Virus record (IMG/VR): IMGVR_UViG_3300045970_000794
Location: 186,001 to 250,000 of that record
Length of the DNA stretch: 64,000 nucleotides
Reading direction: 5' to 3' (one strand)
Shown here piece after piece: positions 643-57,859 of the stretch (positions are counted from its first letter, which is position 1; every line of letters starts with the position of its first letter). A model generated the notes under the pieces. It was given only the letters and a program-made list of their open reading frames with translations, did no database searches and was not told the origin of the DNA. A program made the translations under genes and the position numbers.

Positions 643-724
643 AATATATTGTATTACTTTATAATAAATATACGAATATTTAAAAAATTAGTTGCATTCA
701 GATATTTATTTAAAAAATAAAATT

Positions 725-1894
725 ATGGCTGCAAGTGAAATTGAGAAAACACGCTTATTTAGACAAGTTAGACATCAACTAGGTGCTCCAATGCGTAAAA
801 TTGAGTTACCAGACGAAAATTTAGTAACTTTATTGGAATTATCTATTGAAGATTACGCTGAATATGTACATAATTGGCTAATAGATAGTCAATGGTCATC
901 ATTTATAGGTCAACCTATTGATACTTTAGATATGGCATTCGCATTAACAACTAGAACATTAGATTTTGAGACACAATTTACTTATGCTTACTCAAAACAA
1001 GTTGGTTTACAAGCTAGAGGTCCATGGGAACTCAAAAAAGATTATGTTGAGATAGAAGCTGGTAGACAAGTTTATGAAATTCCAGCTGGTCGTGAGGTAA
1101 ATCAAGTATTATGGTTAACCCCATCGGTAACTAATCGTGCATTATTTGCTAATTTTGGTGGTTTTGATAACGGTATTGGTGGTGGTTACGCTCAAACTGG
1201 TTTTGGAGTCGGTGGTGGTGGTACTGGTGCTGGTTCTGGTGGTATGGGTGGAAGAGGTGGATATTATATCGCACCAGCATTTGATGTTTTATTGACTGCG
1301 GCCGATATGAATCTTAAACATAGATTATTAAGAAGTGATTTAGTATATAAAATAACCGCTGGGCCTAATGGTACTAAGTTATTACATTTAATTAGCACAC
1401 CAGGTTCTAAAATGACATTCGGTATGGGTGGTCAAGGTGGAAGTATGGCTGGTTCTAGTTCTTTAGGTATTGCTGGATGTCACGTATGGTATCATTATTA
1501 CGATACTAATGGTGATGTTGATGCATGTAGAGCGGCTAATTTAGATATTATTACGATGCCGAATGAAGTACCATTAACTAGATTAGATTTTGATGTGTTA
1601 AATGAACCTACAAAAATATTAATTCGTCAAATATTAACAGCTAGAGCTAAAATAACCTTAGGAAGAACTAGGGGTAAGTTTGGTGGTGTTGTTGGTCCAC
1701 CAGAAGCTGAAAGAACTATGGATTGGGAAAGTTTATTAACTGAAGGTAATGAAGAATATGGTAAAATATTTGAAAGATTAGCTGCTAGGTTAGAGCAAAT
1801 GACTAATACTAAAATGTTAGAGCGAAAAGCTAATGAAGCTGAAAACTTAAATAAAACATTAGCTTATAGACCCTTAGGATTTTACGTTATTTAG
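725..1894 (+). CDS. Neck/head-completion protein (T4 gp13-like)
   Basis: RHQLGAPMRKIELPDE N-terminus and GRTRGKFGGV C-terminal motif typical of gp13-like neck proteins. ATG 725 preferred to TTG 692 because it follows the ATATTTAT motif at 702. Confidence 0.7.
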   Translation: MAASEIEKTRLFRQVRHQLGAPMRKIELPDENLVTLLELSIEDYAEYVHNWLIDSQWSSFIGQPIDTLDMAFALTTRTLDFETQFTYAYSKQVGLQARGPWELKKDYVEIEAGRQVYEIPAGREVNQVLWLTPSVTNRALFANFGGFDNGIGGGYAQTGFGVGGGGTGAGSGGMGGRGGYYIAPAFDVLLTAADMNLKHRLLRSDLVYKITAGPNGTKLLHLISTPGSKMTFGMGGQGGSMAGSSSLGIAGCHVWYHYYDTNGDVDACRAANLDIITMPNEVPLTRLDFDVLNEPTKILIRQILTARAKITLGRTRGKFGGVVGPPEAERTMDWESLLTEGNEEYGKIFERLAARLEQMTNTKMLERKANEAENLNKTLAYRPLGFYVI

Positions 1895-2791
1895 TAATTT
1901 TTTTTCTAATTTTTTAATTATATCTTCATTATACCTAATAATAATTAAAGGGATGCTATTAATATAACAGTATCTCTTTTTTATTTTATCTCTTTTTCTA
2001 ATTGATTTTAGATTATCTAATCCACCCCAATATTTAATTGACCTATAATGTTGTTCACCATTATATTCGATACAAACATTATAATCTGGTAAATAAAAAT
2101 CAAATGGTAACATTATTTTATCTTTACAACCATTAAATCTATGCTGTGGTAAATATTTAATATTATTTATTAATAAAAATTCTCTAATAATTTTTTCACC
2201 CTTTGATGATTTACACTTAGAACACCCTTGACCTTTTAAATGATTACTAGGGGTTTGCTCAAATTCACCATGAATTGAACATATAATTTTAACTTTATTA
2301 TGTGCATTAATATAAATTACATTAGAATAATCATATTTATTTGTGTGAATTTCTAAAGATTTAGTTATGAATTTATCATTTTTAAACCTTTTACTATCAC
2401 CAACTGCTTTCCAACCACATTTTTGACAACCATAACTCTCCAAATGCCATTTAGCTTTTTGTTTAAATTCACCATGTATTGGGCATATTATATCTAAAAC
2501 ACTATGTTTATTTATATAATTAATGTTAGTATAATCGTATTTATTACCATGTTTTTGTTTTGCTTTAATTATAAATTCTTCATTAGTTAATTTTGAGTTT
2601 ATTTTACATTTTGGACATCCACTATTACTTCTTAGATGATTTCTTGGTTCCATTAAAAACTCACCATGTATTGGACATATTATGATTATGTTTTCGTATT
2701 GTGTTATATAATTAGCTTTTGAATAATCATATTTATCACCATGTTTTTGTACTGCTCGTTTAATAAAAATTTCTGTAGTTATCATATTCAT
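1874..2791 (-). CDS. Free-standing endonuclease: three Zn-finger-like repeats (YDYS..IICPIHGEF..GCxKC) plus C-terminal PD-(D/E)xK-like (Vsr/DUF559-type) domain
   Basis: Repeats visible in translation; C-terminal LPFDFYLPDYNVCIEYNGEQHY...RDKIKKRYC...IPLIIIRY. Confidence 0.8.
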   Translation of the reverse strand: MNMITTEIFIKRAVQKHGDKYDYSKANYITQYENIIIICPIHGEFLMEPRNHLRSNSGCPKCKINSKLTNEEFIIKAKQKHGNKYDYTNINYINKHSVLDIICPIHGEFKQKAKWHLESYGCQKCGWKAVGDSKRFKNDKFITKSLEIHTNKYDYSNVIYINAHNKVKIICSIHGEFEQTPSNHLKGQGCSKCKSSKGEKIIREFLLINNIKYLPQHRFNGCKDKIMLPFDFYLPDYNVCIEYNGEQHYRSIKYWGGLDNLKSIRKRDKIKKRYCYINSIPLIIIRYNEDIIKKLEKKLLNNVKS

Positions 2792-2831
2792 TTTATTATA
2801 AATATATTGAAATTAATAAAAGAAATTTTAA

Positions 2832-2870
2832 ACTATGAAATATCGTCCTATGGGATTCTATGTAATATAA
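2832..2870 (+). repeat. Orphan second copy of the neck gene 3' end
   Basis: Reads TMKYRPMGFYVI* versus TLAYRPLGFYVI* at 1856..1894; followed directly by a terminator. Confidence 0.85.
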
Positions 2871-2871
2871 A

Positions 2872-2901
2872 AAAAGCGGGCTAATACCCGCTTTATTTTT
2901 T
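2872..2901. terminator. Intrinsic terminator, probably bidirectional
   Basis: aaaaGCGGG-ctaata-CCCGCtttattttt between convergent genes. Confidence 0.75.
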
Positions 2902-2902
2902 A

Positions 2903-5900
2903 CTAGAAATTCCATTCATCATCGTCTTCGTTAAGAGTTATCTCAGCAACTTCTTGTATTGCTTCGACAATGACCTTTTCCTCTTCGTTAATGGACTGAT
3001 TTGGTTCTACTGATAGTACTGATTCATTTAATACTTTTTGTTGTTCTAAATGTTTTAACCAAAAGTCATAAGGTTTTTTAAGTTCATCATCATTAAGAGT
3101 CTCGTAAAATTCAGCTCTAGTTATGGCTTCATCCTCGTATTTAAATATATCATCTAGCTTACCGATTTCCTCATCGTATTTTTTAGATAGGAATATTAAT
3201 TCACCTTCTTCGTTAACACTTAAATACGCTATATTTACGTAGTTATTAATAACATCTATCGCAACATCATAATCAGAAGCTAATAATTCATTAATATTTT
3301 CTAATTGGTTAGCTTCAAGTCGTTTAATTAAATCATCAATTTTTTTACGTTCGAAAATAAGGTCACCTTCTTTCATTTTAGCTACTCTATCTAAATAGTC
3401 AGCTTTAATTCCTTCCCAATCTTCTAGCGAAACACCAATATCTTCTAGGTTATTTGGTGTTTTATTTACTTTAAGCCAAAATTTAATTTCTTTATCTTCG
3501 AAATTCATTAAATCTTTTTCGTAGTCATCTTGGTCGATTGGTTCATCTGGAATACCAGATACAAGTATACATTCTTCTTCGGTGAATATTTGAGGCTCCG
3601 CTAATGTCATTTTTTTAGTCTTCCTATCGGTTTTAGTTTCAACAAAAATCTTATCACGAATTTCTTTTTTGAATACAACCAATAATGGGGTTATTCGATT
3701 ATTAAATGCTGTTAAATACTTAGCCACATTATATTCTTCTGTGGTTAAATTGGAATCACTTTCAATATCCTCAGTTGGAATCAATTTACAATTTAATTTA
3801 ACGACACCTTTTTCAGTTTTAATATCACCATGTGATTTTTTTTCACCAGTATTAACATAGTAGATTACATCACCTAATTCAACTTTTAAATTATGTAAAA
3901 TTGCTAATTCCATATGTGCTTGCTTAGGCATTGGTTTACCAGCTTTATTAGTTTTTTTACATTTTTTCTTGTATTCATCAATACTAATCTTAACTTTAGA
4001 TTTTGATGCAATTTTAATTAAAGGAATTGAATAACTATAAATCATATCGACATATTTTTGATATAACTCAATAAATTCACTACCTTTATTATCCAATAAT
4101 AATACAATTGCTTCATCTAAAAATTCTTCAATGTATGTTGGCATTTTCTTAGATTTGATAGTATTACCAACCAATTTAATCTTAGTTTTACCTTTTTTGA
4201 TGATTTTATTAGCGTAATTCTTTCTAGCGAAATTAATAGTTGATTCACCGATTTCATCAATATCCAATCCCATTCTACCAATCATGTAAGTATCATTGAA
4301 TTCAGCAACTACAGCTTTTACACCGATATATTCTTTATCTTTTTCATTGAATGAATGTTTTCCATTTGAAATATACGTTATATTATCAATATCCAGTGGT
4401 ATTTCAAAGTTAAAACCATCGGTATTTTTAAGATTAATTAATCCAATTCCACCAATAAAAGTCCCATCATCAGTTGATATGTCATAAACAAAATTATTAA
4501 TATCTTTATTAGAAATTATTTCATTTTTCCAAACTTCATCAGACTTTTTTAATGTTTTTTTAGTAAAACTAGATAAATTACGATTATTATTTTTTAATGA
4601 AAATGAAATAAAATTTTGTTTATCTTTTCTGGTTTTAATTTTATACTCAATATTTAAATTTTTCATTAATAAACCAATACCAGCCATAGCAACTTGAGAC
4701 TTCATACCAATATCTGAACAAGTATCTATAGTATTTCCATAACCATCAGATGCACACACACCTTCTAAAAAATATTTTTTAATATCATTATTAGAATTTA
4801 AAATAATATTAGGTATTTTTTTCTCCCTGTAAGAAGTGTAAAAGTTTTCACAGAAAAATGTTGCGAATGTTGCATTGTGAACAACTAAATTATAGACACT
4901 ACTAGATTTTAAGTGGTTTTTTATTTCAGATTTAATTTTAAATTTAGTTTCTAAAATTAATTTTAATTTCTCCAAAAATTCTAAATTTGAATTGGATATC
5001 TTCCAGTCACTTCGTTTACCTTTATTAATATGTATTTCACCAGTTTTTTTGGACCTATATTTTTGCGTTCTTTTTGAACAATTAGCTGAACCATCACCCA
5101 AGAAAAAACCATATAACCAAGCCTCATCACTTGATATGCTATTTATTGAGTTAAAATCATTTAAATCATTACAAACATCAATCTTATCACCTCTTTTTAA
5201 TTTTGATGGTTTTATTTGAATATTATTCTGAAACAATGAATGGTCTTCAGTTACATTAACTAACCTATCTTTAGTGGTTATTCGGTGAATTGTTTTTTCA
5301 GTTTCATGTCTAAAAACATATTTAATATTTTTCCAACCATTTACAGTTAAAACTTCATATGGTTTAGCTTCAAAATCACGTAATTTATGAGAATCAATAT
5401 AGTTTGAATTTTCATTAAATAAATCACAAATTGGTAATATATCTAACATTCCATTTTTATATCTAATATAAACTGGTGTATCATATGTAACTGAATCACC
5501 CACAAGTGGTATAAAACCATATTTTTCAACAAAGAACTTAACCATAAGTCTTAAATACATTCTACCTCTACATGTTGTTTCTTCAGCCAAATCCATTTGT
5601 GACCATGGGAATACATCTGGCGCACCATAAGAACCGAAGAATGAGTTAGCAAGTATTTTAAGTGGTAATTGTTTTCTATCATAGAAACTACCAGTCTTCG
5701 TATCACCAAGACCATAAGCTTCATTCATCAAAGCTTTGTATTTATCACGATAATCAACAATATAGGTTAATAAACCTTTCATAACACCACTGATATCAAT
5801 ATCAGAGAATATATTCCAAGTTAATTGAGTTTTTGGGTAAAGAGCTGCATAATCGAGTTTTGAATATTTACCAGCTTTACCAACTCTAAGTAATCTTGAT

Positions 5901-7267
5901 AAACCACCAGTAAAATCACGTTTCTTATCAAATTCTGGAATAGCCAAATCATTTTCATATGACCAAGCTAACATTATCAACTTCCAAATGGTTGCAGTAC
6001 CCATGGTAAGGGTACGCATAAATGATGTTGGTAAAATTTTAGATAATAAGAATGATGCTTGATTAAAAATGAAACCTACTTGTTCGGTTTCCCATAAATC
6101 ATCTAAAAGATATCGTTCAGCAATATATTGCCCTGTAACAATTTCATATTCATCTTTAAGTGGTTTATTTTCAGTTATTTTATACCAATCACCATTGACA
6201 TCATTAAATGCATACTCATTTACTTTATCGGACCAAATAGTACCAATCATTCTACCATCATTAATATAAACACGATTTGGTTTATTAATTTCGGAAAATT
6301 TAGTAATATATTTTAATCCAGCTTTTTTAATATCAGAATTAATCGCTTGAGCTCTACGAACTGAATGATAAATGTCGGCAATGTTATATCCCCACATGTA
6401 TGTTTGTTCATAATATTCAGTATCACTACCTAATTTTAATGTTGATTGTTTACGTTTAATTTTAACATTAGGGTTTAATGTTTTTACCATTTTAGTAATA
6501 TCAACATTTAATAATCTACATCTTTCAAAGATATAGTACCAGTCAAATGTTTCTGAATTATAACCTTCAATAATATCTGGCTTTAATGCATCAATAATAC
6601 CAAAAAATGTTTCTAATGCTTGAACTTCTCTACTTAATCTATTTGGACCATCTTCAATTGTTAATATTGTCTCCCACCCACGATTATTTTTAATACCTAT
6701 TTGATTAATATGTGTATTATGTGGGTCTAAACCAGTTGTTTCTAAGTCGAACTGAAGTCTATGCAAATCATTATAATCATCAAATCCCTTGAATAATCGT
6801 TTACCAGATTGAATCATATATTGCTCAATTGGTGGTAATGTCATGAAATTCTTATTACCATTTATCTCACAACCAGCATCTTTAAAGAAATTTAATAATT
6901 GAAGGTAATTTTTGCTTCCAGTGATAAGGTATTTATATCCAGCGGCTAATCGTTGTGGTTCAGTACCTTCATCATTTTTAGTTTTAAGTAATTTAACTTT
7001 AATTTCAGCTTTACGCATTTCATTCTTCAACTTACCTCTATTTCCACCGTATAAATCATCCAATGCGGCTTCTTTCATCCAAAGGAATGGCTTATACTTT
7101 TCTTTTTTGACTATTTTAGTTGAAGTACCATAACCATTTGGTTGGTTAATTATTACTGAAACAGTTTCATCGTAATAATTAGCTTCAATTGCTGTAATGT
7201 ATTTTTGTGGGTCGTGACCATCGAAAAATTGTTCAATAGCCTCAGGTGTAACTTGTTTTTGCTCCAT
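2903..7267 (-). CDS. polB: Family B DNA polymerase containing an intein
   Basis: ExoI FDLETTG, ExoII GYNSETFDW, motif A DYAALYP, motif B KILANSFFG, motif C VGD|TDG split by intein, RKNYA. Likely start MEQKQ at 7267 (ORF track starts 7306). Confidence 0.95.
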   Translation of the reverse strand: MEQKQVTPEAIEQFFDGHDPQKYITAIEANYYDETVSVIINQPNGYGTSTKIVKKEKYKPFLWMKEAALDDLYGGNRGKLKNEMRKAEIKVKLLKTKNDEGTEPQRLAAGYKYLITGSKNYLQLLNFFKDAGCEINGNKNFMTLPPIEQYMIQSGKRLFKGFDDYNDLHRLQFDLETTGLDPHNTHINQIGIKNNRGWETILTIEDGPNRLSREVQALETFFGIIDALKPDIIEGYNSETFDWYYIFERCRLLNVDITKMVKTLNPNVKIKRKQSTLKLGSDTEYYEQTYMWGYNIADIYHSVRRAQAINSDIKKAGLKYITKFSEINKPNRVYINDGRMIGTIWSDKVNEYAFNDVNGDWYKITENKPLKDEYEIVTGQYIAERYLLDDLWETEQVGFIFNQASFLLSKILPTSFMRTLTMGTATIWKLIMLAWSYENDLAIPEFDKKRDFTGGLSRLLRVGKAGKYSKLDYAALYPKTQLTWNIFSDIDISGVMKGLLTYIVDYRDKYKALMNEAYGLGDTKTGSFYDRKQLPLKILANSFFGSYGAPDVFPWSQMDLAEETTCRGRMYLRLMVKFFVEKYGFIPLVGDSVTYDTPVYIRYKNGMLDILPICDLFNENSNYIDSHKLRDFEAKPYEVLTVNGWKNIKYVFRHETEKTIHRITTKDRLVNVTEDHSLFQNNIQIKPSKLKRGDKIDVCNDLNDFNSINSISSDEAWLYGFFLGDGSANCSKRTQKYRSKKTGEIHINKGKRSDWKISNSNLEFLEKLKLILETKFKIKSEIKNHLKSSSVYNLVVHNATFATFFCENFYTSYREKKIPNIILNSNNDIKKYFLEGVCASDGYGNTIDTCSDIGMKSQVAMAGIGLLMKNLNIEYKIKTRKDKQNFISFSLKNNNRNLSSFTKKTLKKSDEVWKNEIISNKDINNFVYDISTDDGTFIGGIGLINLKNTDGFNFEIPLDIDNITYISNGKHSFNEKDKEYIGVKAVVAEFNDTYMIGRMGLDIDEIGESTINFARKNYANKIIKKGKTKIKLVGNTIKSKKMPTYIEEFLDEAIVLLLDNKGSEFIELYQKYVDMIYSYSIPLIKIASKSKVKISIDEYKKKCKKTNKAGKPMPKQAHMELAILHNLKVELGDVIYYVNTGEKKSHGDIKTEKGVVKLNCKLIPTEDIESDSNLTTEEYNVAKYLTAFNNRITPLLVVFKKEIRDKIFVETKTDRKTKKMTLAEPQIFTEEECILVSGIPDEPIDQDDYEKDLMNFEDKEIKFWLKVNKTPNNLEDIGVSLEDWEGIKADYLDRVAKMKEGDLIFERKKIDDLIKRLEANQLENINELLASDYDVAIDVINNYVNIAYLSVNEEGELIFLSKKYDEEIGKLDDIFKYEDEAITRAEFYETLNDDELKKPYDFWLKHLEQQKVLNESVLSVEPNQSINEEEKVIVEAIQEVAEITLNEDDDEWNF
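4424..5494 (-). mobile_element. Intein (357 aa) with LAGLIDADG homing endonuclease in polymerase motif C
   Basis: Starts SVTYDTPVY after VGD; block B VTEDHSL; WLYGFFLGDGS and FLEGVCASDGY; ends VYDIST...INLKN before T(+1)DG. Confidence 0.92.
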
Positions 7268-7346
7268 ATGTATATAAAAAAATTCAGAAATAATGTAGAA
7301 ATACAAAATAACTTAATTTTTTCGTAAAAAGCAATAAAAAACGTAA

Positions 7347-7472: not shown

Positions 7473-8045
7473 ATGAGAGAAGAAGAAATTAAAATTAGAA
7501 TATCATCGGACATTAAAACGGATTTTCAAAATATATGTGAAATTGAAAATACAACGATGTCTAATAAATTAACTGGATTTATTATTGATGAAATACATCG
7601 CAAAATAATTAAAACATTGGATAATAATACAATAACTAAACGTTTAATTAAATTTGGGATTAATAAAGGGGGTAGGTTCTATCAAAAGAATGAATTACTT
7701 AAAATTATATTGGATGAAGATGGTTTTGAAATATCTCATCTAGATTTTTTAAATAAAAAGACGTTATATGGTCAATTTGGTTTCCATTCTGAGGGTGATG
7801 TAATACATAAATATAATGCAACTCACTCTATCAAAAATCTTAGAATTGATGGTGATTGGTTAATTGGTGATATTACCATTTTGAATCCATCTATACTACC
7901 AGTATTGGATAATTTAGTTTTTAGACCTCGTTCATTTGGTATTATTAGTGAAAACGGTATTGTTAAAGATTTGGAGATAATCGGTTTTGATGCTATACTT
8001 AAAACAGATGATAAATTTATTGATTATGGTGATGAAGATATGTAG
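7473..8045 (+). CDS. RHH-like N-terminus fused to a degenerate prohead-protease (gp21-like) domain
   Basis: N-terminal EIKIRISSDIKTDFQNICE..TMSNKL; INKGGRFY, LYGQFGFH, ATHSIKNLRIDGDWLIGDITI, FRPRSFG and LEIIGFDAI align by eye with the protease at 59567..60268. Confidence 0.65.
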   Translation: MREEEIKIRISSDIKTDFQNICEIENTTMSNKLTGFIIDEIHRKIIKTLDNNTITKRLIKFGINKGGRFYQKNELLKIILDEDGFEISHLDFLNKKTLYGQFGFHSEGDVIHKYNATHSIKNLRIDGDWLIGDITILNPSILPVLDNLVFRPRSFGIISENGIVKDLEIIGFDAILKTDDKFIDYGDEDM

Positions 8046-8760
8046 TAAATGTCAATTACCTAAAGAATTGACTGAATTTAATAAACGAAGTAATTCTAAG
8101 GATGGTTTACGTTATGAATGTAAGTCATGTCAAAAATTAATTTATGAACAAAAAAGAGAATATTACATTATTAAAATGAAAAATAATCGTATTAAACACA
8201 TTGATGAATATGCTAAACGAGATAGAGAATATTATGAAACTAATCGAAATGGTATATTATATCAGAAAAAAGAATATTATAAAGAAAATAGAAATGAAAT
8301 ATTAATAAAGAAAAAAGAATATGATAAAGAAAATAGTGAACATAAAAAAGAATATAATAAAAATTATCGTAAAAATAATAAACCTAAACTAATGAAGTAT
8401 GCTAGGGATTACTCAAAAGAATGGCGTAAAACACATTCACATATTGTAGCTTGGAGGCGTGTACTATCATGCTCATTAAAAAGATTAAATAAATCAAAAG
8501 AAGGTCATACCATTGATTTACTAGGATATTCACCACACCAATTAAAAGAGCATTTAGAATCACTATTTACTGATGGTATGTCATGGGATAATTATGGTGA
8601 ATGGCATATTGACCATAAAATACCAGTTTGTAGCTTTTCAGCTGATACACCACCTAGTGTTGTAAATGCATTAAGTAATTTACAACCATTATGGGCTACC
8701 ACAAGGGAAATAAATGGGATTATTTACGAAGGTAATTTAAATAAATGGAAATATGATTAA
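7987..8760 (+). CDS. HNH homing endonuclease with N-terminal CxxC..CxxC finger; true start probably near 8026-8032
   Basis: KICSKC..ECKSC; GMSWDNYGEWHIDHKIP...NLQPLW..NLNK; paralog of 55292..55975. Confidence 0.85.
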   Translation: MMLYLKQMINLLIMVMKICSKCQLPKELTEFNKRSNSKDGLRYECKSCQKLIYEQKREYYIIKMKNNRIKHIDEYAKRDREYYETNRNGILYQKKEYYKENRNEILIKKKEYDKENSEHKKEYNKNYRKNNKPKLMKYARDYSKEWRKTHSHIVAWRRVLSCSLKRLNKSKEGHTIDLLGYSPHQLKEHLESLFTDGMSWDNYGEWHIDHKIPVCSFSADTPPSVVNALSNLQPLWATTREINGIIYEGNLNKWKYD

Positions 8761-28737: not shown

Positions 28738-28971
28738 ATGAGTAAAGAATCAATAGAGTCAACCAAGATTGAAATATCGAATATAGAGGCTGAAATAGAG
28801 CGTCTGGCGAACTTAAATGAGAAAGTGGATGCTATGCTTGTTTTGAAGTTAAATCATCTTAAAACGAAGCTAAAATGGGATGAGAGTGGTTTGCTTGAAG
28901 GACTTAAAGGTAAACCTAATAAAAATTTAGCATCACTATTAGAATGCTTTAAATCATCAAAAATTAAATAA
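28738..28971 (+). CDS. Hypothetical protein
   Basis: 77-aa ORF followed by terminator. Confidence 0.5.
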   Translation: MSKESIESTKIEISNIEAEIERLANLNEKVDAMLVLKLNHLKTKLKWDESGLLEGLKGKPNKNLASLLECFKSSKIK

Positions 28972-53790: not shown

Positions 53791-53845
53791 TTTTAATTTG
53801 TTTTTATATTAATAAAATAACTAATGAAAAGGTAACCACAAAAAA

Positions 53846-53877
53846 AAAGCCCTACATTACTGTAAGGCTTTTCTTTA
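53846..53877 (-). terminator. Intrinsic terminator after the orphan capsid 3' end
   Basis: aaaGCC(C)TACA-ttac-TGTAAGGCttt flanked by A and T tracts. Confidence 0.65.
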
Positions 53878-53892
53878 TTTATCTAGAAGAGA

Positions 53893-53961
53893 TTATCTCA
53901 ATTCATTGATGTTGAATGTAGGAACACCATCTACTCTTACATGCCCGTAAAACCTGTTGTT
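53893..53961 (-). repeat. Orphan, synonymously recoded copy of the major capsid gene 3' end
   Basis: Encodes NNRFYGHVRVDGVPTFNINELR*, identical to 56072..56140; 11 of 69 nt differ, all silent. Confidence 0.95.
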
Positions 53962-53964
53962 AAA

Positions 53965-53996
53965 TTTGCATTTTTAAAATAATTTTAGTATCTTTG
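53965..53996 (+). promoter_or_regulatory. Bacteroidota-type promoter of the Zn-finger nuclease gene
   Basis: TTTG-N20-TATCTTTG, 5 nt before ATG 54002. Confidence 0.75.
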
Positions 53997-54001
53997 TATT
54001 T

Positions 54002-55318
54002 ATGAAAAAATTAACAAATGAAGCGTTTTTTAAAGGAATAGAAAAAGAACATGGGGATAAATATGATTATTCTAAACTTGAGTATATAAATATGAGTACT
54101 AAAGTAACTATCATATGTCCAATACATGGCGAATTTAAGCAAAGACCACATAATCATGTAGAAGGTAAAGGGTGTCCTAAATGTGGATTTGATAGAACAA
54201 GAAATAGTAAAGTTAAAACAACTAATAAATTTATTGCACAAGCCAATGAAATTCACAATAATAAATATGATTATTCTAAAACCAATTATACAACTGGTAT
54301 TATAAAAGTAATTATTATATGTCCAATACACGGTGAATTTAAACAAGACCCATATAACCACCTACAAGGTAAGGGGTGCCCTAAATGTGGTAAAGTTTAT
54401 AAACCAACAACAGAAGAGTTCATTCAAAAAGTTAGGGGAGTTCATGGAGATAAATATGATTATTCTTTATTTAAATATGTTACCAGTTCAACAGCAAGTG
54501 AAATAATATGTCCAATACATGGAAAATTTAAACAAACACCACAAAACCACCTTAAAGGGAAAGGCTGTTTTAAATGTGGTAAAGCTTATGCTAGTAGGTA
54601 AAGAAGATATAAATTAGATGATGTTATTATTAAATTAAAAAATAAAGGGTTTTATGATGAATCATATAAATATGAAGAAATTTTATTTATAGATGGTGGG
54701 TCGAAAATGTTAATTACTAATAAATATACTAATACAAAACATATTACACCAGTACACAATATATTAAGACGAAAAACTAATTGTTGTTTTGATAATGCTA
54801 TTAATAAACAAGAATACCTTATTAGTATGAGTAATATTGTTCATGATAATAAATATAATTATTCTAAAGTTAATTATAAATCAGCTATATTTAAAATTAT
54901 AATTACATGTCCTACGCATGGTGATTTTAAACAAACTTTTAATTCACATTTAAGAGGTTCTGGGTGTCCTAGATGTTCTGATAGTAAAGGTGAGAAAAAA
55001 ATAAGAAAATTACTAAAGAGTAATGATATTATATTTATCCATCAATATAAATTTAATAATTGTAAGAATGTAAGACCTTTACCTTTTGATTTTTATTTAC
55101 CAGATTATAACGTGTGTATTGAATATAATGGAAAACAACATTATGAACCGATTAAACATTTTGGTGGTAAAAAACAATTAATTTATATACAAAAAAATGA
55201 TAAAATTAAACAAGAATTTTGTGAAAAAGAAGGTATTAAATTAATCACTGTAAAATATAATGAAGATATTGAAGAACGATTAACCGAAGAGTTAAAGAAT
55301 TTGAGTTCCTTTACTTAA
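54002..55318 (+). pseudogene. Zn-finger-repeat PD-(D/E)xK-like endonuclease interrupted by one in-frame TAA
   Basis: ORFs 54002..54601 and 54707..55318 are in one frame; only TAA 54599-54601 interrupts. C-terminus PFDFYLPDYNVCIEYNG matches 1874..2791. Confidence 0.8.
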
Positions 55319-55975
55319 ATTGTCCTCACCCCATAATGGTTGAAGATTATCCAAACGCCAACACTCCTTAAACTCTAGGTCATCAGTACTTTCAAACATA
55401 AAACTATTCATCGGTTTTTTATGGTCTACATGCCACTCACCATAATTATCCCACGTCATTCCATCGGTAAATAAGTTCTCTAAATGAATCATCAATTCTT
55501 CGATACTATAACCTAATAATGCAAATGTTTTATTCGTCTTATTAACATTACGTTCTTTAAGCATTTGCCATACCGCTGTGCGTGTTCTAACACCTAAACG
55601 ATACTTTGGGTCCTCAGCACGTCTTTTACGCTCATAATCACGCTTATATTTGTTTACATGTTCTTTATTTTCATCTCTCCAACTTGAGTGATACTTTCGC
55701 AATTCTTTTCTATTTTCGTTAGACCATTCTTTATGGTATTCGCTAAGGTCTTCTTTATTTTTTTCATAATAACGTTTAGCGGCAGCTGGTTTCCCACCTA
55801 TAAATCGTTTACCAGAAGGTCCAAACACAACACCGTTTTCTTTAAGTGTTCTAATTATTATCGTTTTATGTATACCCATTCGTTCACTAATAGTCGTAGA
55901 CCCAAGTAATTTATCATTATACATTTTCAAACACTCTTGTGTTTGCTCTGGTGTTAATTCTATTTTTTTACTCAT
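55292..55975 (-). CDS. HNH homing endonuclease with N-terminal HTH
   Basis: GMTWDNYGEWHVDHKKP..NLQPLWGEDNLSKG; own TATCTTTG promoter at 55979-55986 (minus). Confidence 0.85.
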   Translation of the reverse strand: MSKKIELTPEQTQECLKMYNDKLLGSTTISERMGIHKTIIIRTLKENGVVFGPSGKRFIGGKPAAAKRYYEKNKEDLSEYHKEWSNENRKELRKYHSSWRDENKEHVNKYKRDYERKRRAEDPKYRLGVRTRTAVWQMLKERNVNKTNKTFALLGYSIEELMIHLENLFTDGMTWDNYGEWHVDHKKPMNSFMFESTDDLEFKECWRLDNLQPLWGEDNLSKGTQIL

Positions 55976-56022
55976 ATACAAAGATACTAATAATAGTTTA
56001 TAAAGTCAAGTAATATTAACAA

Positions 56023-56048
56023 AAAAGGTGGAGATAAATCCACCTTTT
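56023..56048 (-). terminator. Terminator of the major capsid gene
   Basis: aaaaGGTGGA-gataaa-TCCACCtttt. Confidence 0.75.
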
Positions 56049-56071
56049 AAGTTTTATATTATCAAGAGTGA

Positions 56072-57859
56072 TTATCTCAACTCATTAATATTGAATGTAG
56101 GTACACCATCAACTCTTACGTGACCATAGAAACGGTTGTTCACAACTTTCTTAGCGTAACGTGTCATTATACCCTTAACAGGGGCAAAGTTGAATGGGTT
56201 GTACATTGTTGGAGTAAGTTGCAAAGGCACGTATGGTGCGTAGATGTAACCAGTATCCAATAATGATTTACCTTTATGACCGATAATCATTGAGTAGTAA
56301 GGAGCATAAGGGTCACGATACACTTGGTAACGTCCACTTAATGAACCAATTCTTTCAATACCCATGTTGTATTGGTCTTGTTCTGGACTTGCGTCAGAAA
56401 CGTGGAAATATTCTAAATCGTCAAATATAGCACTGATTTCAGAAGATACAACGATGAAGTTAGCACCACCTCTAAGTGTAGATTTATGGATTTGTGCTGA
56501 AATTTGGTTAACTTTAGTTAATAAAGTTTGATTCCAGTCTTTTTGAGTGTAAGGACTTGCAGCTGTAGAAGCTTTTCTCCAACCTTGGTAATCCCATCTC
56601 ATTTGCCATGCAGCAGCTTTACGTAAATCACGAAGGATTTCACGGTCAATTTCAGCAGCTACTTGTTCAGACAACATAGCAGTCAATTCAGCTTCAGCAT
56701 CGATGTTGTGGAATGCACTAACGTCTTGAGCCAATTCTGGTGACCATGTTGCACGTAATTTTCTTTCTTCAACAGATACAACAACTTCGTCAAGTTTGAA
56801 AGAAATTTCAGCAAGTTCAGTTTCTAATTCAAGAGTTGCATAAGTTGCATATGATACTGTAAATGCAGTTGCACCAGTTGCAGCATAAGTACTAGAACTT
56901 ACAGCTCCAACATAACCATCATATGTAGATGTACCGTTAGATGATACTGGGTGACTTAAATCAAGGTCTAAATACATAATACCTTCAGCGTCACAAATAT
57001 CAGTATATTCAACAATACCTTTACCGTATTTTTGAGTTACAATTCTAAATGGAACTTCAGCATTTTGTGCAATGATTACTTTACCATCTGGGTCAGTAAT
57101 TGCAGCGTTTGCACTAACAATTTTAAGACCAGCTAAGAAGCTTTCAGTATCCATTGGATGTCCATCAGGTCCGTTTAATCTACCAGCACCACTACCAGTG
57201 AAACCAGTTACTTTAAGGATTACGTTTCTGATTGAACCATCAACTGCGTAAGTTGGGGTTGTTGCATTAGCCCAAACACCATTAGCATTTAATGTAACAG
57301 GTTGAGTCAATGTCATTGCATTGATAGTTATTGTACCTTTTGAGTTGTCAAATAAACCATCATTGTAATATAAATCGTAAAGTGATTTACTTCTGAAAGT
57401 TGTTTCTAAACAACCATCAATAACACAACTTGGAAGTTGTCCAACAGCCATACCAGTGTGAGCTGAATATGTTGCACCGTCAATCCATGGGTCACCATAA
57501 GTTCCAGTTGAATTATTTGTTCTGTAAGAAGTTTGTGGTACGAAGAAGAACAATTTACCAATTGGCATGTTCAACGCTTGTACAGACACGATATCGTTAG
57601 CTAAAAGCTTAGAGAATACTCTTCTTACGATAGGGAATACTACTGTTTCGAAAGAACCAGAAGAATCCGCTGTAGTGTTTTCGGTTAATAAAGTACTAGC
57701 TTGGTTTTCATAAAGCTGAGCAATATTTTCCTTAACGTGGCCTTTAAGACCTTCTAAGAATCCAAGAGATTCCCATTTTTCTTGAGTCATTTTACGGATA
57801 ACTTTCATGTGGTTTAATCCAATGTTACCTACTTGACCTGATGTTAATAAATGTCCCAT
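56072..57859 (-). CDS. Major capsid protein (T4 gp23-like)
   Basis: PIVRRVF..VSVQ..P.GKLF; RKLRATWSPELAQD..DAEAEL..EIDREI; YAPYVPL..GIMTRY. Confidence 0.97.
   Translation of the reverse strand: MGHLLTSGQVGNIGLNHMKVIRKMTQEKWESLGFLEGLKGHVKENIAQLYENQASTLLTENTTADSSGSFETVVFPIVRRVFSKLLANDIVSVQALNMPIGKLFFFVPQTSYRTNNSTGTYGDPWIDGATYSAHTGMAVGQLPSCVIDGCLETTFRSKSLYDLYYNDGLFDNSKGTITINAMTLTQPVTLNANGVWANATTPTYAVDGSIRNVILKVTGFTGSGAGRLNGPDGHPMDTESFLAGLKIVSANAAITDPDGKVIIAQNAEVPFRIVTQKYGKGIVEYTDICDAEGIMYLDLDLSHPVSSNGTSTYDGYVGAVSSSTYAATGATAFTVSYATYATLELETELAEISFKLDEVVVSVEERKLRATWSPELAQDVSAFHNIDAEAELTAMLSEQVAAEIDREILRDLRKAAAWQMRWDYQGWRKASTAASPYTQKDWNQTLLTKVNQISAQIHKSTLRGGANFIVVSSEISAIFDDLEYFHVSDASPEQDQYNMGIERIGSLSGRYQVYRDPYAPYYSMIIGHKGKSLLDTGYIYAPYVPLQLTPTMYNPFNFAPVKGIMTRYAKKVVNNRFYGHVRVDGVPTFNINELR

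What the first reader, a model, noticed from the sequence alone, without database searches (positions are those of the whole stretch)
53893..56140. Major capsid 3' end present twice with only silent differences, bracketing two nucleases
The 22 codons are identical in protein with 11 silent changes in 69 nt; six of the changes cluster in five codons next to the breakpoint, as expected if the target site was recoded. Each copy has its own terminator, and the nuclease promoter starts 4 nt from the orphan copy. Two convergent nucleases overlapping by 27 nt lie between the copies, suggesting successive invasions of one site.
Basis: partly seen in the sequence, partly recalled or inferred. Interest (0 to 1): 0.8.

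Follow-up and report, generated by a model that had tools for sequence, protein, structure and literature searches.

The report
Spare capsid-gene tail flanking nuclease genes
A giant T4-like phage carries two selfish nuclease genes inside the end of its main capsid gene, with a donor-type copy of the gene's last 22 codons in use and the old tail left unused downstream; four other phages break at the same codon.

Summary
The last 22 codons plus stop of the Gp23-type major capsid gene (56072-56140, minus strand) recur at 53893-53961. There are 11 differences and all are silent. Each copy has its own terminator hairpin. Between them lie an HTH+HNH nuclease gene (55292-55975, minus) and a convergent zinc-ribbon/Vsr-like nuclease gene (54002-55318, plus) split by an in-frame TAA. 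The two genes overlap by 27 nt.

Comparison with about 270 related loci changes the reading. The working tail, terminator T1 and the HNH gene form a unit shared with relatives (90% identity to L164). An HNH gene follows the capsid gene in 34 of 141 relatives, scattered almost at random on the capsid tree. The orphan's terminator T2 has no homolog and looks resident. Four other contigs (L015, L204, L264, L265) have an intact orphan tail starting at the same Asn codon but flanking different cargo. Across four genomes there are 47 silent and 0 replacement differences.

My best reading is a tail-replacement homing cassette, as known next to homing endonuclease genes in fungal mitochondria. Cleavage sites are untested.

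The parts
56072..57859 (-). Major capsid protein gene (595 aa, T4 Gp23 family).
   Evidence: Pfam PF07068 Gp23, E 1.4e-70. It follows portal, prohead protease and scaffold-like genes.
56072..56140 (-). Working tail: the last 22 codons plus stop, probably donor-type and linked to the HNH cassette.
   Evidence: Together with T1 and the HNH promoter it is 90% identical over 156 nt to L164/L165, whose capsid proteins are only 74% identical overall.
56023..56048 (-). Terminator T1 after the working tail.
   Evidence: Terminator scan and fold at -17.9 kcal/mol, z -5.4. It is 89-94% identical to the terminators of HNH-positive relatives L164, L166, L170, L025 and L169.
55976..56009 (-). Promoter-like region of the HNH gene (TTGACT, 17 nt, TATCTT; contains TTAGTATCTTTGTAT).
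   Evidence: The region is conserved upstream of HNH homologs.
55292..55975 (-). Free-standing HTH + HNH-type endonuclease gene (227 aa from the ATG at 55975).
   Evidence: PHROG 1035, E 2.4e-13. H182, D184, H185 and N210 are invariant and N219 nearly so in 24 homologs. AlphaFold2 pLDDT 85.6, with an N-terminal HTH and a C-terminal beta-beta-alpha. More than 3,300 homologs, none named.
54707..55318 (+). C-terminal piece of the second nuclease (203 aa): one zinc-ribbon repeat plus a Vsr-like nuclease domain. Its last 27 nt overlap the HNH gene tail to tail.
   Evidence: PHROG 559, 9084 and 7140. E96, D128 and H145 are invariant and D165 nearly so. Model pLDDT 85.9. Foldseek matches Vsr 1cw0/1vsr with probability 0.98-0.99.
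54599..54601 (+). In-frame TAA that splits the second nuclease gene. Codons 54602-54706 behind it are stop-free and in the same frame.
   Evidence: The same 199+203 aa gene calls appear in the 362-kb contig and a 40.9-kb contig of another run; a third, 1.7-kb contig shows the 203-aa piece and a cut-off upstream piece. The 35-codon linker has no homolog.
54002..54601 (+). N-terminal piece of the second nuclease (199 aa): three DUF723/DUF4379 zinc-ribbon repeats and no nuclease domain.
   Evidence: Pfam PF05265 and PF14311. PHROG 681, E 7e-47.
53962..54001 (+). Promoter-like spacer between the orphan and the second nuclease gene.
   Evidence: Read from the sequence and (shared 15-mer). Not tested experimentally.
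53893..53961 (-). Orphan tail: an untranslatable copy of the last 22 codons plus stop. There is a stop 4 codons upstream and no start codon.
53841..53876 (-). Terminator T2 after the orphan, probably the resident capsid-gene terminator.
   Evidence: Fold at -20 kcal/mol, z -3.6. The 96 nt after the orphan stop have no homolog in about 170 related loci.
2841..2870 (+). Second, shorter orphan in the same window: YRPMGFYVI plus stop. It copies the end of the 400-aa gene at 692-1894 (YRPLGFYVI plus stop) and lies 49 nt from the start of a reverse-oriented paralog of the second nuclease (1874-2791, minus strand).
   Evidence: Almost every codon differs silently. The geometry is the same as at the capsid locus.

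Best explanation
The locus is a homing-endonuclease island that sits inside the 3' end of the capsid gene as a tail-replacement cassette. DNA from a related phage came in. It comprised a capsid-gene tail, terminator T1 and the HNH endonuclease gene, and the reverse-oriented Vsr-like nuclease gene is now at its far edge. On the left it recombined within the conserved capsid gene. On the right it was joined to the resident chromosome exactly at Asn574 (AAC AAC). The resident last 22 codons, stop and terminator T2 were left behind as an untranslated orphan.

Shown:
- the duplication itself and its abrupt edge;
- the nuclease families of the two ORFs;
- the linkage of the working tail, T1 and the HNH gene in relatives;
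- the patchy distribution of the HNH gene;
- the uniqueness of T2;
- the recurrence of the same breakpoint with other cargo in four other phages.

Inferred:
- A nuclease of a co-infecting phage, most likely this HNH family, breaks the capsid gene at or near GTN|AAYAAY.
- Repair is homologous on the capsid side.
- On the other side it is either illegitimate (the one-sided repair described for T4 introns) or uses an orphan already present in the donor as the right-hand homology arm.
- The all-silent differences arise because both copies are, or very recently were, working capsid tails. The orphan is kept peptide-identical in one of two ways: each homing event refreshes it, or selection preserves its match to target genes, which vary only at silent sites.
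For: - The duplication is real and the copies differ only silently.
- Working tail + T1 + HNH promoter are 90% identical to L164, and T1 is 89-94% identical to other HNH-positive loci, while T2 has no homolog.
- An HNH gene lies directly after the capsid gene on the same strand in 34 of 141 relatives. That needs 26 state changes on the capsid tree, against 30.6 for shuffled labels.
- L150 keeps only the last ~25 codons of the HNH gene, a decaying copy.
- Both nucleases have conserved catalytic residues.
- Five independent contigs have orphans starting at the same codon, with unrelated upstream flanks and different cargo.
- Across four genomes the differences are 47 silent and 0 replacement. 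Random pairs of tails at the same distance share the peptide in only ~10% of cases, a joint P of about 2e-4, and L015 shares a variant seen in 1 of 196 alleles.
- A second orphan lies next to a paralog of the Vsr-like nuclease in the same window.
- An 18-27-nt look-alike of the site AAYAAYMGNTTYTAYGG sits upstream of the HNH gene in many relatives: at least 8 bits in 9 of 32 HNH-positive spacers against 2 of 103 HNH-negative ones, Mann-Whitney P 3e-7.
- Precedents: one-sided illegitimate double-strand-break repair, segD lying reversed between T4 genes 23 and 24, and homing-site mimics upstream of I-TevI to III (PMC2988022); C-terminal duplications of cob and atp6 flanked by endonuclease ORFs (PMC6279837; PMC7487136).
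Against: - No cleavage site is known for either nuclease.
- About 30 HNH-positive relatives have no intact orphan downstream, so the orphan is not an obligatory part of the HNH element.
- L015 and L204 have orphans but no nuclease between the copies.
- No gradient of association between HNH presence and capsid-gene nucleotides towards the 3' end was found.
- No near-isogenic relative was found (best capsid identity 79%), so donor, recipient and order of events cannot be read directly.
- In L015 the two copies are identical from codon 19 through the terminator but differ at 12 silent sites before that. Simple two-lineage joining does not explain this without a further exchange.
Confidence: 0.65

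Rival explanations
1. The working copy is a recoded, cleavage-immune version of the target site, and the silent changes next to the breakpoint were selected for immunity. Two nucleases invaded the same site in succession.
For: - The breakpoint recurs in five contigs.
- A look-alike of exactly these codons sits upstream of HNH genes in relatives.
- The silent-only pattern is stronger than random allele pairing predicts.
- The HNH-only state is common and the two nuclease families are unrelated.
Against: - The clustering is not significant (P 0.11-0.17).
- The differences are spread over all 22 codons and are as numerous as between unrelated phages.
- An orphan-like allele (46/48 nt) is the working tail of HNH-positive L012.
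- No codon separates HNH-positive from HNH-negative relatives.
Confidence: 0.2
2. The orphan is an accidental relic with no role. A single illegitimate recombination between two related phages happened to duplicate the tail. The nucleases are bystanders in a hypervariable region.
For: - The region after the capsid gene is hypervariable: orf141, orf108 and orf191 have no homologs in relatives.
- Most HNH-positive loci have no orphan.
- The orphan cannot be translated.
Against: - The same breakpoint occurs in five independent contigs with different cargo.
- There are no replacement changes, frameshifts or stops among 47 differences.
- The same window holds a second orphan next to a paralogous nuclease.
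Confidence: 0.12
3. Assembly artefact: two strain haplotypes were joined by the assembler.
For: The source is a metagenome assembly, and no reads were available to me.
Against: - The copies share no exact stretch longer than 11 nt, and 2.1 kb of unique genes lie between them.
- The same capsid gene, HNH, 203+199 aa pieces and orf141 order, with the same 212-nt spacer, is on a 40.9-kb Logan contig from another run whose downstream genes differ in length. The nuclease pair is also on a 1.7-kb contig of a sister sample.
- Four other assemblies show the same architecture.
Confidence: 0.03
4. The 2.1-kb insert is an intron-like element and the orphan is a real second exon, or an alternative tail.
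For: Joining Val573 to the orphan would give the same protein.
Against: - No group I or II intron or other RNA family was found at E up to 1.
- The working copy is complete and is followed by a strong terminator.
- The insert holds two genes, each preceded by the same promoter-like motif, on opposite strands.
Confidence: 0.02

Closest known systems
Partial C-terminal duplications of host genes next to free-standing homing endonuclease genes in fungal mitochondria (cob and atp6 of Endoconidiophora resinifera, PMC6279837; atp6 and cox1 cases in PMC7487136)
   Same: An intact host gene is followed by endonuclease ORFs and then by a displaced copy of the gene's 3' end.
   Different: This case is in a phage structural gene. 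The nuclease genes are separate ORFs, each with its own promoter-like motif, and each tail copy has its own terminator. The same breakpoint recurs in five phages, and the orphan stays peptide-identical (47 silent, 0 replacement differences). The mitochondrial copies are described as pseudogenes.
Free-standing homing endonucleases of T4-like phages (seg and mob genes), in particular segD between genes 23 and 24 (PMC2988022)
   Same: A free-standing endonuclease gene lies directly after the gene 23 homolog. One of the two is antisense to its neighbours, as segD is. The distribution among relatives is patchy. One-sided illegitimate break repair is documented in T4.
   Different: The nuclease families differ: HTH+HNH without zinc-binding cysteines, and zinc-ribbon+Vsr-like, rather than GIY-YIG. 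No tail duplication of the target gene is mentioned in that T4 review (no occurrence of 'duplicat').
EDxHD / Vsr-like homing endonucleases (I-Bth0305I, phage Hef; PMC3239194)
   Same: The C-terminal piece of the second nuclease has a Vsr-like fold and conserved E, D, H and D residues. The D-to-H spacing is 17 residues, as in I-Bth0305I.
   Different: The DNA-binding part is made of DUF723/DUF4379 zinc-ribbon repeats rather than NUMOD/HTH. The gene is free-standing rather than in an intron, and here it is split by a stop codon.
[quoted passage not shown]
   Same: Relatives carry an 18-27-nt look-alike of the capsid-gene site just upstream of, or overlapping, the HNH promoter.
   Different: The window's own HNH cassette lacks the look-alike. 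In L091/L092 it precedes a non-nuclease gene, so it may instead be a decayed orphan. Binding is untested.

Membership tests
HNH (beta-beta-alpha-Me) nuclease superfamily, for the ORF at 55292-55975 | Conserved His...Asn...Asn/His catalytic motif. | tested here: met
   H182, D184, H185 and N210 are invariant and N219 is at least 90% conserved in 24 homologs of 44-77% identity.
HNH (beta-beta-alpha-Me) nuclease superfamily, for the ORF at 55292-55975 | Match to a curated HNH profile or a solved HNH structure. | tested here: inconclusive
   No Pfam hit and no PDB sequence hit, alone or as a profile. Foldseek found only the N-terminal HTH, at E 0.1-1. PHROG 1035 'endonuclease VII' matches at E 2.4e-13. 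The model has strands 181-185 and 211-215 followed by helix 216-226.
DHHRN / Endo VII-motif homing endonucleases (F-CphI, PMC6083498) | A central DHDH flanked by CX2-4C and CX2C zinc ligands. | tested here: not met
   The motif is WHVDH with a single conserved Cys (C205) and no CxxC pairs (compared).
Free-standing homing endonuclease gene | Sporadic presence among close relatives at one fixed site next to a conserved gene. | tested here: met
   Present in 34 of 141 relatives, always 95-150 nt after the capsid stop on the same strand. This needs 26 changes on the capsid tree, against 30.6 for shuffled labels.
Free-standing homing endonuclease gene | Site-specific cleavage of the allele that lacks the gene. 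| not testable with these tools
   Needs purified protein and DNA substrates.
Free-standing homing endonuclease gene | Co-conversion of flanking target-gene sequence. | tested here: inconclusive
   The tail and T1 are 90% identical to L164. Across 141 loci there is no gradient of association towards the 3' end.
EDxHD / Vsr-like homing endonucleases, for the ORF at 54002-55318 | Vsr-like fold with conserved E, D, H and D residues. | tested here: met
   E96, D128 and H145 are invariant and D165 is at least 90% conserved in 35 sequences. Foldseek matches 1cw0 and 1vsr with probability 0.98-0.99 but weak E values of 0.02. Some homologs are named very-short-patch-repair endonuclease by JGI.
EDxHD / Vsr-like homing endonucleases, for the ORF at 54002-55318 | One intact reading frame joining the DNA-binding and nuclease parts. 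| tested here: not met
   There is an in-frame TAA at 54599-54601; the 199+203 aa gene calls recur in two assemblies and partly in a third. Homologs are single ORFs of 290-356 aa, and a 305-aa paralog at 1874-2791 is intact.
Host-gene C-terminal duplication associated with homing endonuclease genes (fungal mitochondrial type) | Intact host gene, then endonuclease ORF(s), then a displaced copy of the host gene's 3' end. | tested here: met
   for the window. for L264 and L265.
Group I/II intron or intein | A ribozyme core or an in-frame protein-splicing domain. | tested here: not met
   No intron family at E up to 1. The capsid ORF is complete and ends before the insert.

The most novel reading that the evidence does not exclude
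T4-like jumbo phages of this clade harbour a class of mobile cassettes that live inside the essential capsid gene without an intron or intein. Each carries a spare, silently different tail plus a terminator at its front. The displaced tail is kept, beginning exactly at the break site, as the right-hand homing arm. Selection on the element, not on any protein, keeps that untranslated arm peptide-identical to its targets. The same arms let nuclease genes and leader-bearing cargo genes (MKxLIKKLLRE, possibly proteins packaged in the head) be swapped between phages.
Probability: 0.3. Interest if true: 0.8.

Novelty: new variant of a known kind. Interest (0 to 1): 0.62.

Why it matters
Homing endonuclease genes usually avoid harming their host in one of two ways: they sit between genes, or they hide in self-splicing introns and inteins. 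A cassette that brings its own copy of the host gene's tail is a third way. It is documented in fungal mitochondria. My three full-text searches found no phage paper that describes it.

If the fixed breakpoint marks the cleavage site, this family of more than 3,300 unnamed proteins gains a testable target. If the silent-only divergence of an untranslated sequence holds up, it would be an unusual case of selection on DNA homology that looks like selection on a protein. It would also explain how the hypervariable slot after the capsid gene exchanges cargo between phages whose downstream genes share no homology.

Tried and rejected
**Led nowhere**
- A co-conversion gradient, meaning association of HNH presence with capsid-gene nucleotides in 60-nt bins. 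Differences were 0-0.036 with no trend.
- Sliding identity along the capsid gene against HNH-positive relatives. It only reflects the conserved C-terminal half.
- A search for a near-isogenic relative. The best capsid identity was 79% in metagenomes, and the closest HNH homologs (83-84%) sit in phages with 73-75% capsid identity.
- The closest homologs of the Vsr-like nuclease are only about 60% identical, so its origin is unknown.
- The 35-codon linker after the in-frame stop has no homolog. That the two pieces were once one gene rests only on the shared frame and the absence of stops (my rough estimate is 2-5% by chance).

**Rejected**
- L043 as a further orphan: it is the C-terminus of a second, tandem paralogous nuclease gene.
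- L132 site match: it lies inside an unrelated ORF.
- TAnnTTTG as a general promoter of this phage: it precedes 4 of 64 ORFs against 2.6 expected.
- Membership of the HNH protein in the F-CphI/Endo VII family: there are no zinc-binding cysteines.

My sequence reads stayed under 6,000 letters.
- The broken nuclease gene was searched as separate pieces and never read through.


Full report
**What the window is**

The window is AT-rich (30% G+C) and comes from a 362,102-bp metagenomic contig (JGI 3300045970). The minus strand from 63934 to 56072 carries a T4-type head module:
- portal (PF07230);
- prohead protease (PF03420);
- a 504-aa acidic scaffold-like protein;
- a 595-aa major capsid protein of the Gp23 family (PF07068, E 1.4e-70).

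No cultured phage is close. The best capsid matches in GenBank phages are 40-43% identical. The host is unknown.

**Check of the observation**

Read on the minus strand, 56072-56140 and 53893-53961 both encode NNRFYGHVRVDGVPTFNINELR plus a stop. They differ at 11 of 69 nt, all silent. Upstream of AACAAC the two sequences are unrelated (4 of 18 nt). Downstream of the stop they are alignable but diverged (52% over 70 nt).

Only 21% of single substitutions in this stretch would be silent, so eleven silent changes in a row have a probability of about 4e-8. Both copies are followed by a stable hairpin and a U-run.

The clustering of six changes in five codons next to the breakpoint is not significant (P 0.11-0.17).

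**The two genes between the copies**

*The minus-strand ORF.* Its real start is probably the ATG at 55975, giving 227 aa.
- It has an N-terminal helix-turn-helix and a C-terminal WHVDH...N...N motif.
- H182, D184, H185 and N210 are invariant in 24 homologs that are 44-77% identical.
- It matches PHROG 1035 at E 2.4e-13. It matches no Pfam family and no solved structure by sequence.
- The AlphaFold2 model (pLDDT 85.6) shows strand-strand-helix at the motif. Foldseek recognises only the HTH part, weakly.
- It lacks the zinc-binding cysteines of the F-CphI/Endo VII family.
- More than 3,300 homologs exist, all unnamed.

*The plus-strand gene.* It is in two pieces in one frame. Piece 54002-54601 has three DUF723/DUF4379 zinc-ribbon repeats. 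Piece 54707-55318 has one repeat plus a nuclease domain. A single TAA and 35 stop-free codons separate them.
- The nuclease domain has conserved E96, D128, H145 and D165.
- Its model has pLDDT 85.9. Its best named structural matches are the Vsr endonuclease structures 1cw0 and 1vsr (probability 0.98-0.99, E about 0.02).
- This is the pattern of the EDxHD family described for I-Bth0305I.
- The 199+203 aa gene calls recur in the 362-kb contig and a 40.9-kb contig of another run; a third, 1.7-kb contig shows the 203-aa piece and a cut-off upstream piece.

The two genes converge and overlap by 27 nt. An exact 15-mer, TTAGTATCTTTGTAT, lies 3-5 nt before both start codons and nowhere else in the window.

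**Relatives: zero, one or two nucleases**

I fetched 80 loci from IMG/VR and 80 from metagenomes with the capsid protein. I fetched 7 more through the closest HNH homologs and 101 through a DNA pattern.
- Of 141 loci with enough downstream sequence, 34 (including the window) have an HNH homolog directly after the capsid gene on the same strand. The other 107 have none.
- On a capsid protein tree the HNH state needs 26 changes, against 30.6 on average for shuffled labels. The gene is scattered almost at random, as expected for a mobile and frequently lost element.
- L150 keeps only the last ~25 codons of the HNH gene.
- Only the window's phage has both nucleases. Genes of the Vsr-like family follow the capsid gene in a few distant relatives, such as L037 and L039.

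**Which copy belongs to what**

The working tail, T1 and the HNH promoter are 90% identical over 156 nt to L164/L165. The capsid proteins of those loci are only 74% identical to the window's overall. T1 alone is 89-94% identical to the terminators of L164, L166, L170, L025 and L169, all HNH-positive. The 96 nt after the orphan's stop match nothing in about 170 loci. The genes beyond it (orf141, orf108, orf191) have no homologs in relatives either.

So the working tail travels with the HNH cassette, and the orphan with T2 looks like the resident end of the gene.

The idea that the working copy is immune and the orphan sensitive is weakened by two results:
- The orphan's first 48 nt are 96% identical to the working tail of L012, an HNH-positive phage with the same type of cassette.
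- No codon separates HNH-positive from HNH-negative relatives.

**The architecture recurs**

An orphan finder took the last 30 residues of every ORF of at least 100 aa and searched the downstream DNA of 271 loci. It found intact capsid-tail orphans in four further, independent contigs.

| Locus | Order after the capsid gene |
|---|---|
| L015 | terminator, 257-aa gene, orphan, terminator |
| L204 | terminator, 134-aa gene, orphan, terminator |
| L264 | T1-type terminator, HNH, 132-aa gene, orphan, terminator |
| L265 | T1-type terminator, HNH, 183-aa gene, orphan, terminator |

- In all five contigs the orphan begins at the first Asn codon of NNRFYGH, and the sequences upstream of it are unrelated (2-6 of 18 nt).
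- The working copy and the orphan differ at 11 (window), 12 (L015), 13 (L264) and 11 (L265) positions. That makes 47 silent and 0 replacement differences.
- In L204 the orphan differs at three residues but equals the common allele of other phages.
- Among 196 distinct working tails, pairs that differ at 10-14 nt encode the same peptide in only 10% of cases. The joint probability for the four loci is about 2e-4. L015's orphan also shares a Lys variant seen in 1 of 196 alleles.

Something therefore keeps the untranslated copy peptide-identical to the resident tail.

**A second orphan in the window**

The 400-aa gene at 692-1894 ends YRPLGFYVI plus a stop. An intact 305-aa paralog of the Vsr-like nuclease lies reversed at 1874-2791 and overlaps that end by 21 nt. 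Forty-nine nt beyond the paralog's start, 2841-2870 reads YRPMGFYVI plus a stop, followed by a terminator. Nearly every codon differs silently. The geometry is the same as at the capsid locus.

**The look-alike upstream of HNH genes**

Many HNH-positive relatives have an 18-27-nt look-alike of AAYAAYMGNTTYTAYGG between the capsid terminator and the HNH start codon. An example is L001, ATT AAT AAT CGA TTA TAT GGT CAT GTG.
- With a position weight matrix built from 152 capsid sites, matches of at least 12 bits outside the capsid gene number 11 in 3 Mb scanned. Six of them lie in these roughly 100-nt spacers.
- At a threshold of 8 bits the count is 9 of 32 HNH-positive spacers against 2 of 103 HNH-negative ones (P 3e-7).
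- In L001 and L008 the look-alike abuts or overlaps the promoter's upstream element. This recalls the homing-site mimics through which I-TevI represses itself. If so, it would identify these codons as the HNH binding site.
- The window's own cassette type lacks the look-alike, and in L091/L092 it precedes a different gene. It may therefore be a decayed orphan instead. I leave this open.

**Mechanism**

The evidence fits a cassette that replaces the tail of the capsid gene. The left join is by homology within the conserved gene. The right join is exactly at Asn574. It is either illegitimate, as in the one-sided break repair documented for T4 introns, or it uses an orphan already present in the donor as a homology arm.

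A fixed right edge next to five different left-flanking sequences argues for a mechanistic cause, most simply a break at that position. The widespread HNH family is the prime suspect. The silent-only divergence can be explained in three ways that I cannot separate:
- Only donors with the same C-terminal peptide give viable capsids.
- Each homing event replaces the orphan with a tail that was working until then.
- Selection keeps the arm matched to target genes, which vary only at silent sites.

**What is against this reading**
- No cleavage data exist for either nuclease.
- About 30 HNH-positive loci have no orphan.
- Two orphan-bearing loci have no nuclease between the copies.
- No co-conversion gradient was found.
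- L015's copies are identical from codon 19 through the terminator, which needs an extra exchange.

**Artefact and intron readings**

A chimera is unlikely. The copies share no exact stretch longer than 11 nt, and the gene order and spacing recur on a contig from another run. Four other assemblies show the same design. No intron or other RNA family was found.

**Comparison with what is known**

[quoted passage not shown] In T4 itself, segD sits reversed between genes 23 and 24, and endonuclease genes often cluster near capsid genes in other phages. My three full-text searches returned no phage paper describing a duplicated target-gene tail.

I rate this a new variant of a known kind. It is of moderate to high interest because of the fixed breakpoint and the silent-only divergence of an untranslated sequence.

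Noticed in passing
window 692-2900: A second tail duplication. The gene at 692-1894 ends YRPLGFYVI plus stop. A reversed 305-aa paralog of the Vsr-like nuclease lies at 1874-2791. An orphan reading YRPMGFYVI plus stop lies at 2841-2870, followed by a terminator, just before the end of the DNA polymerase gene.
   Followed up: partly
window 2903-7306: A family B DNA polymerase of 1467 aa with a LAGLIDADG_3 domain at residues 729-818. This is probably an intein with a homing endonuclease.
   Followed up: no
window 7987-8760 and 3-215: A paralog of the HNH nuclease (41% identity over 150 aa; PHROG 1035, E 7e-22) and a further fragment of the Vsr-like nuclease family at the window's edge. The 64 kb holds at least five endonuclease genes.
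   Followed up: partly
L001 7869-7895; L008, L009, L017, L032, L087, L094, L098, L099 between the capsid stop and the HNH start: An 18-27-nt look-alike of the capsid-gene site AAYAAYMGNTTYTAYGG upstream of the HNH gene. It is weaker in the distant clade, absent from the window's cassette type, and present before a different gene in L091/L092. It could be an operator or a decayed orphan.
   Followed up: partly
L015 7860, L204 12489, L264 774, L265 3576, L026 5326, L103 6738 and about 25 more: At least 32 otherwise unrelated ORFs, many directly after the capsid gene, begin with the leader MKxLIKKLLRE. From my own knowledge this resembles the T4 capsid targeting sequence, which is cut after L-x-E. 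They may be proteins packaged in the head. The window has none.
   Followed up: partly
L150 4145-4263: Only the last ~25 codons of the HNH gene remain, directly after the look-alike. This is a decaying copy of the nuclease gene.
   Followed up: no
L068 5687-5743; L210 1529-1615 and L260 5676-5762: Further tail duplications of other genes. The end of the HNH gene in L068 recurs about 540 nt downstream. The last 29 residues of a 158-aa ORF recur 370 nt downstream at 83% identity.
   Followed up: no
window 28738-28971: A 77-aa ORF whose C-terminal half resembles residues 13-51 of the capsid protein (KWDESGLLEGLKG against KWESLGFLEGLKG, E 3.5e-4). It may share the capsid protein's N-terminal propeptide signal.
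   Followed up: no
L015 9141-10238: A 365-aa ORF with a GIY-YIG-like N-terminus (IYIYGL...IRYIGKS) about 430 nt beyond the orphan. It had no PHROG hit.
   Followed up: no
L166 8731-8931 (also L167, L168): A fragment matching residues 146-216 of the HNH protein lies about 3 kb beyond the intact HNH gene.
   Followed up: no
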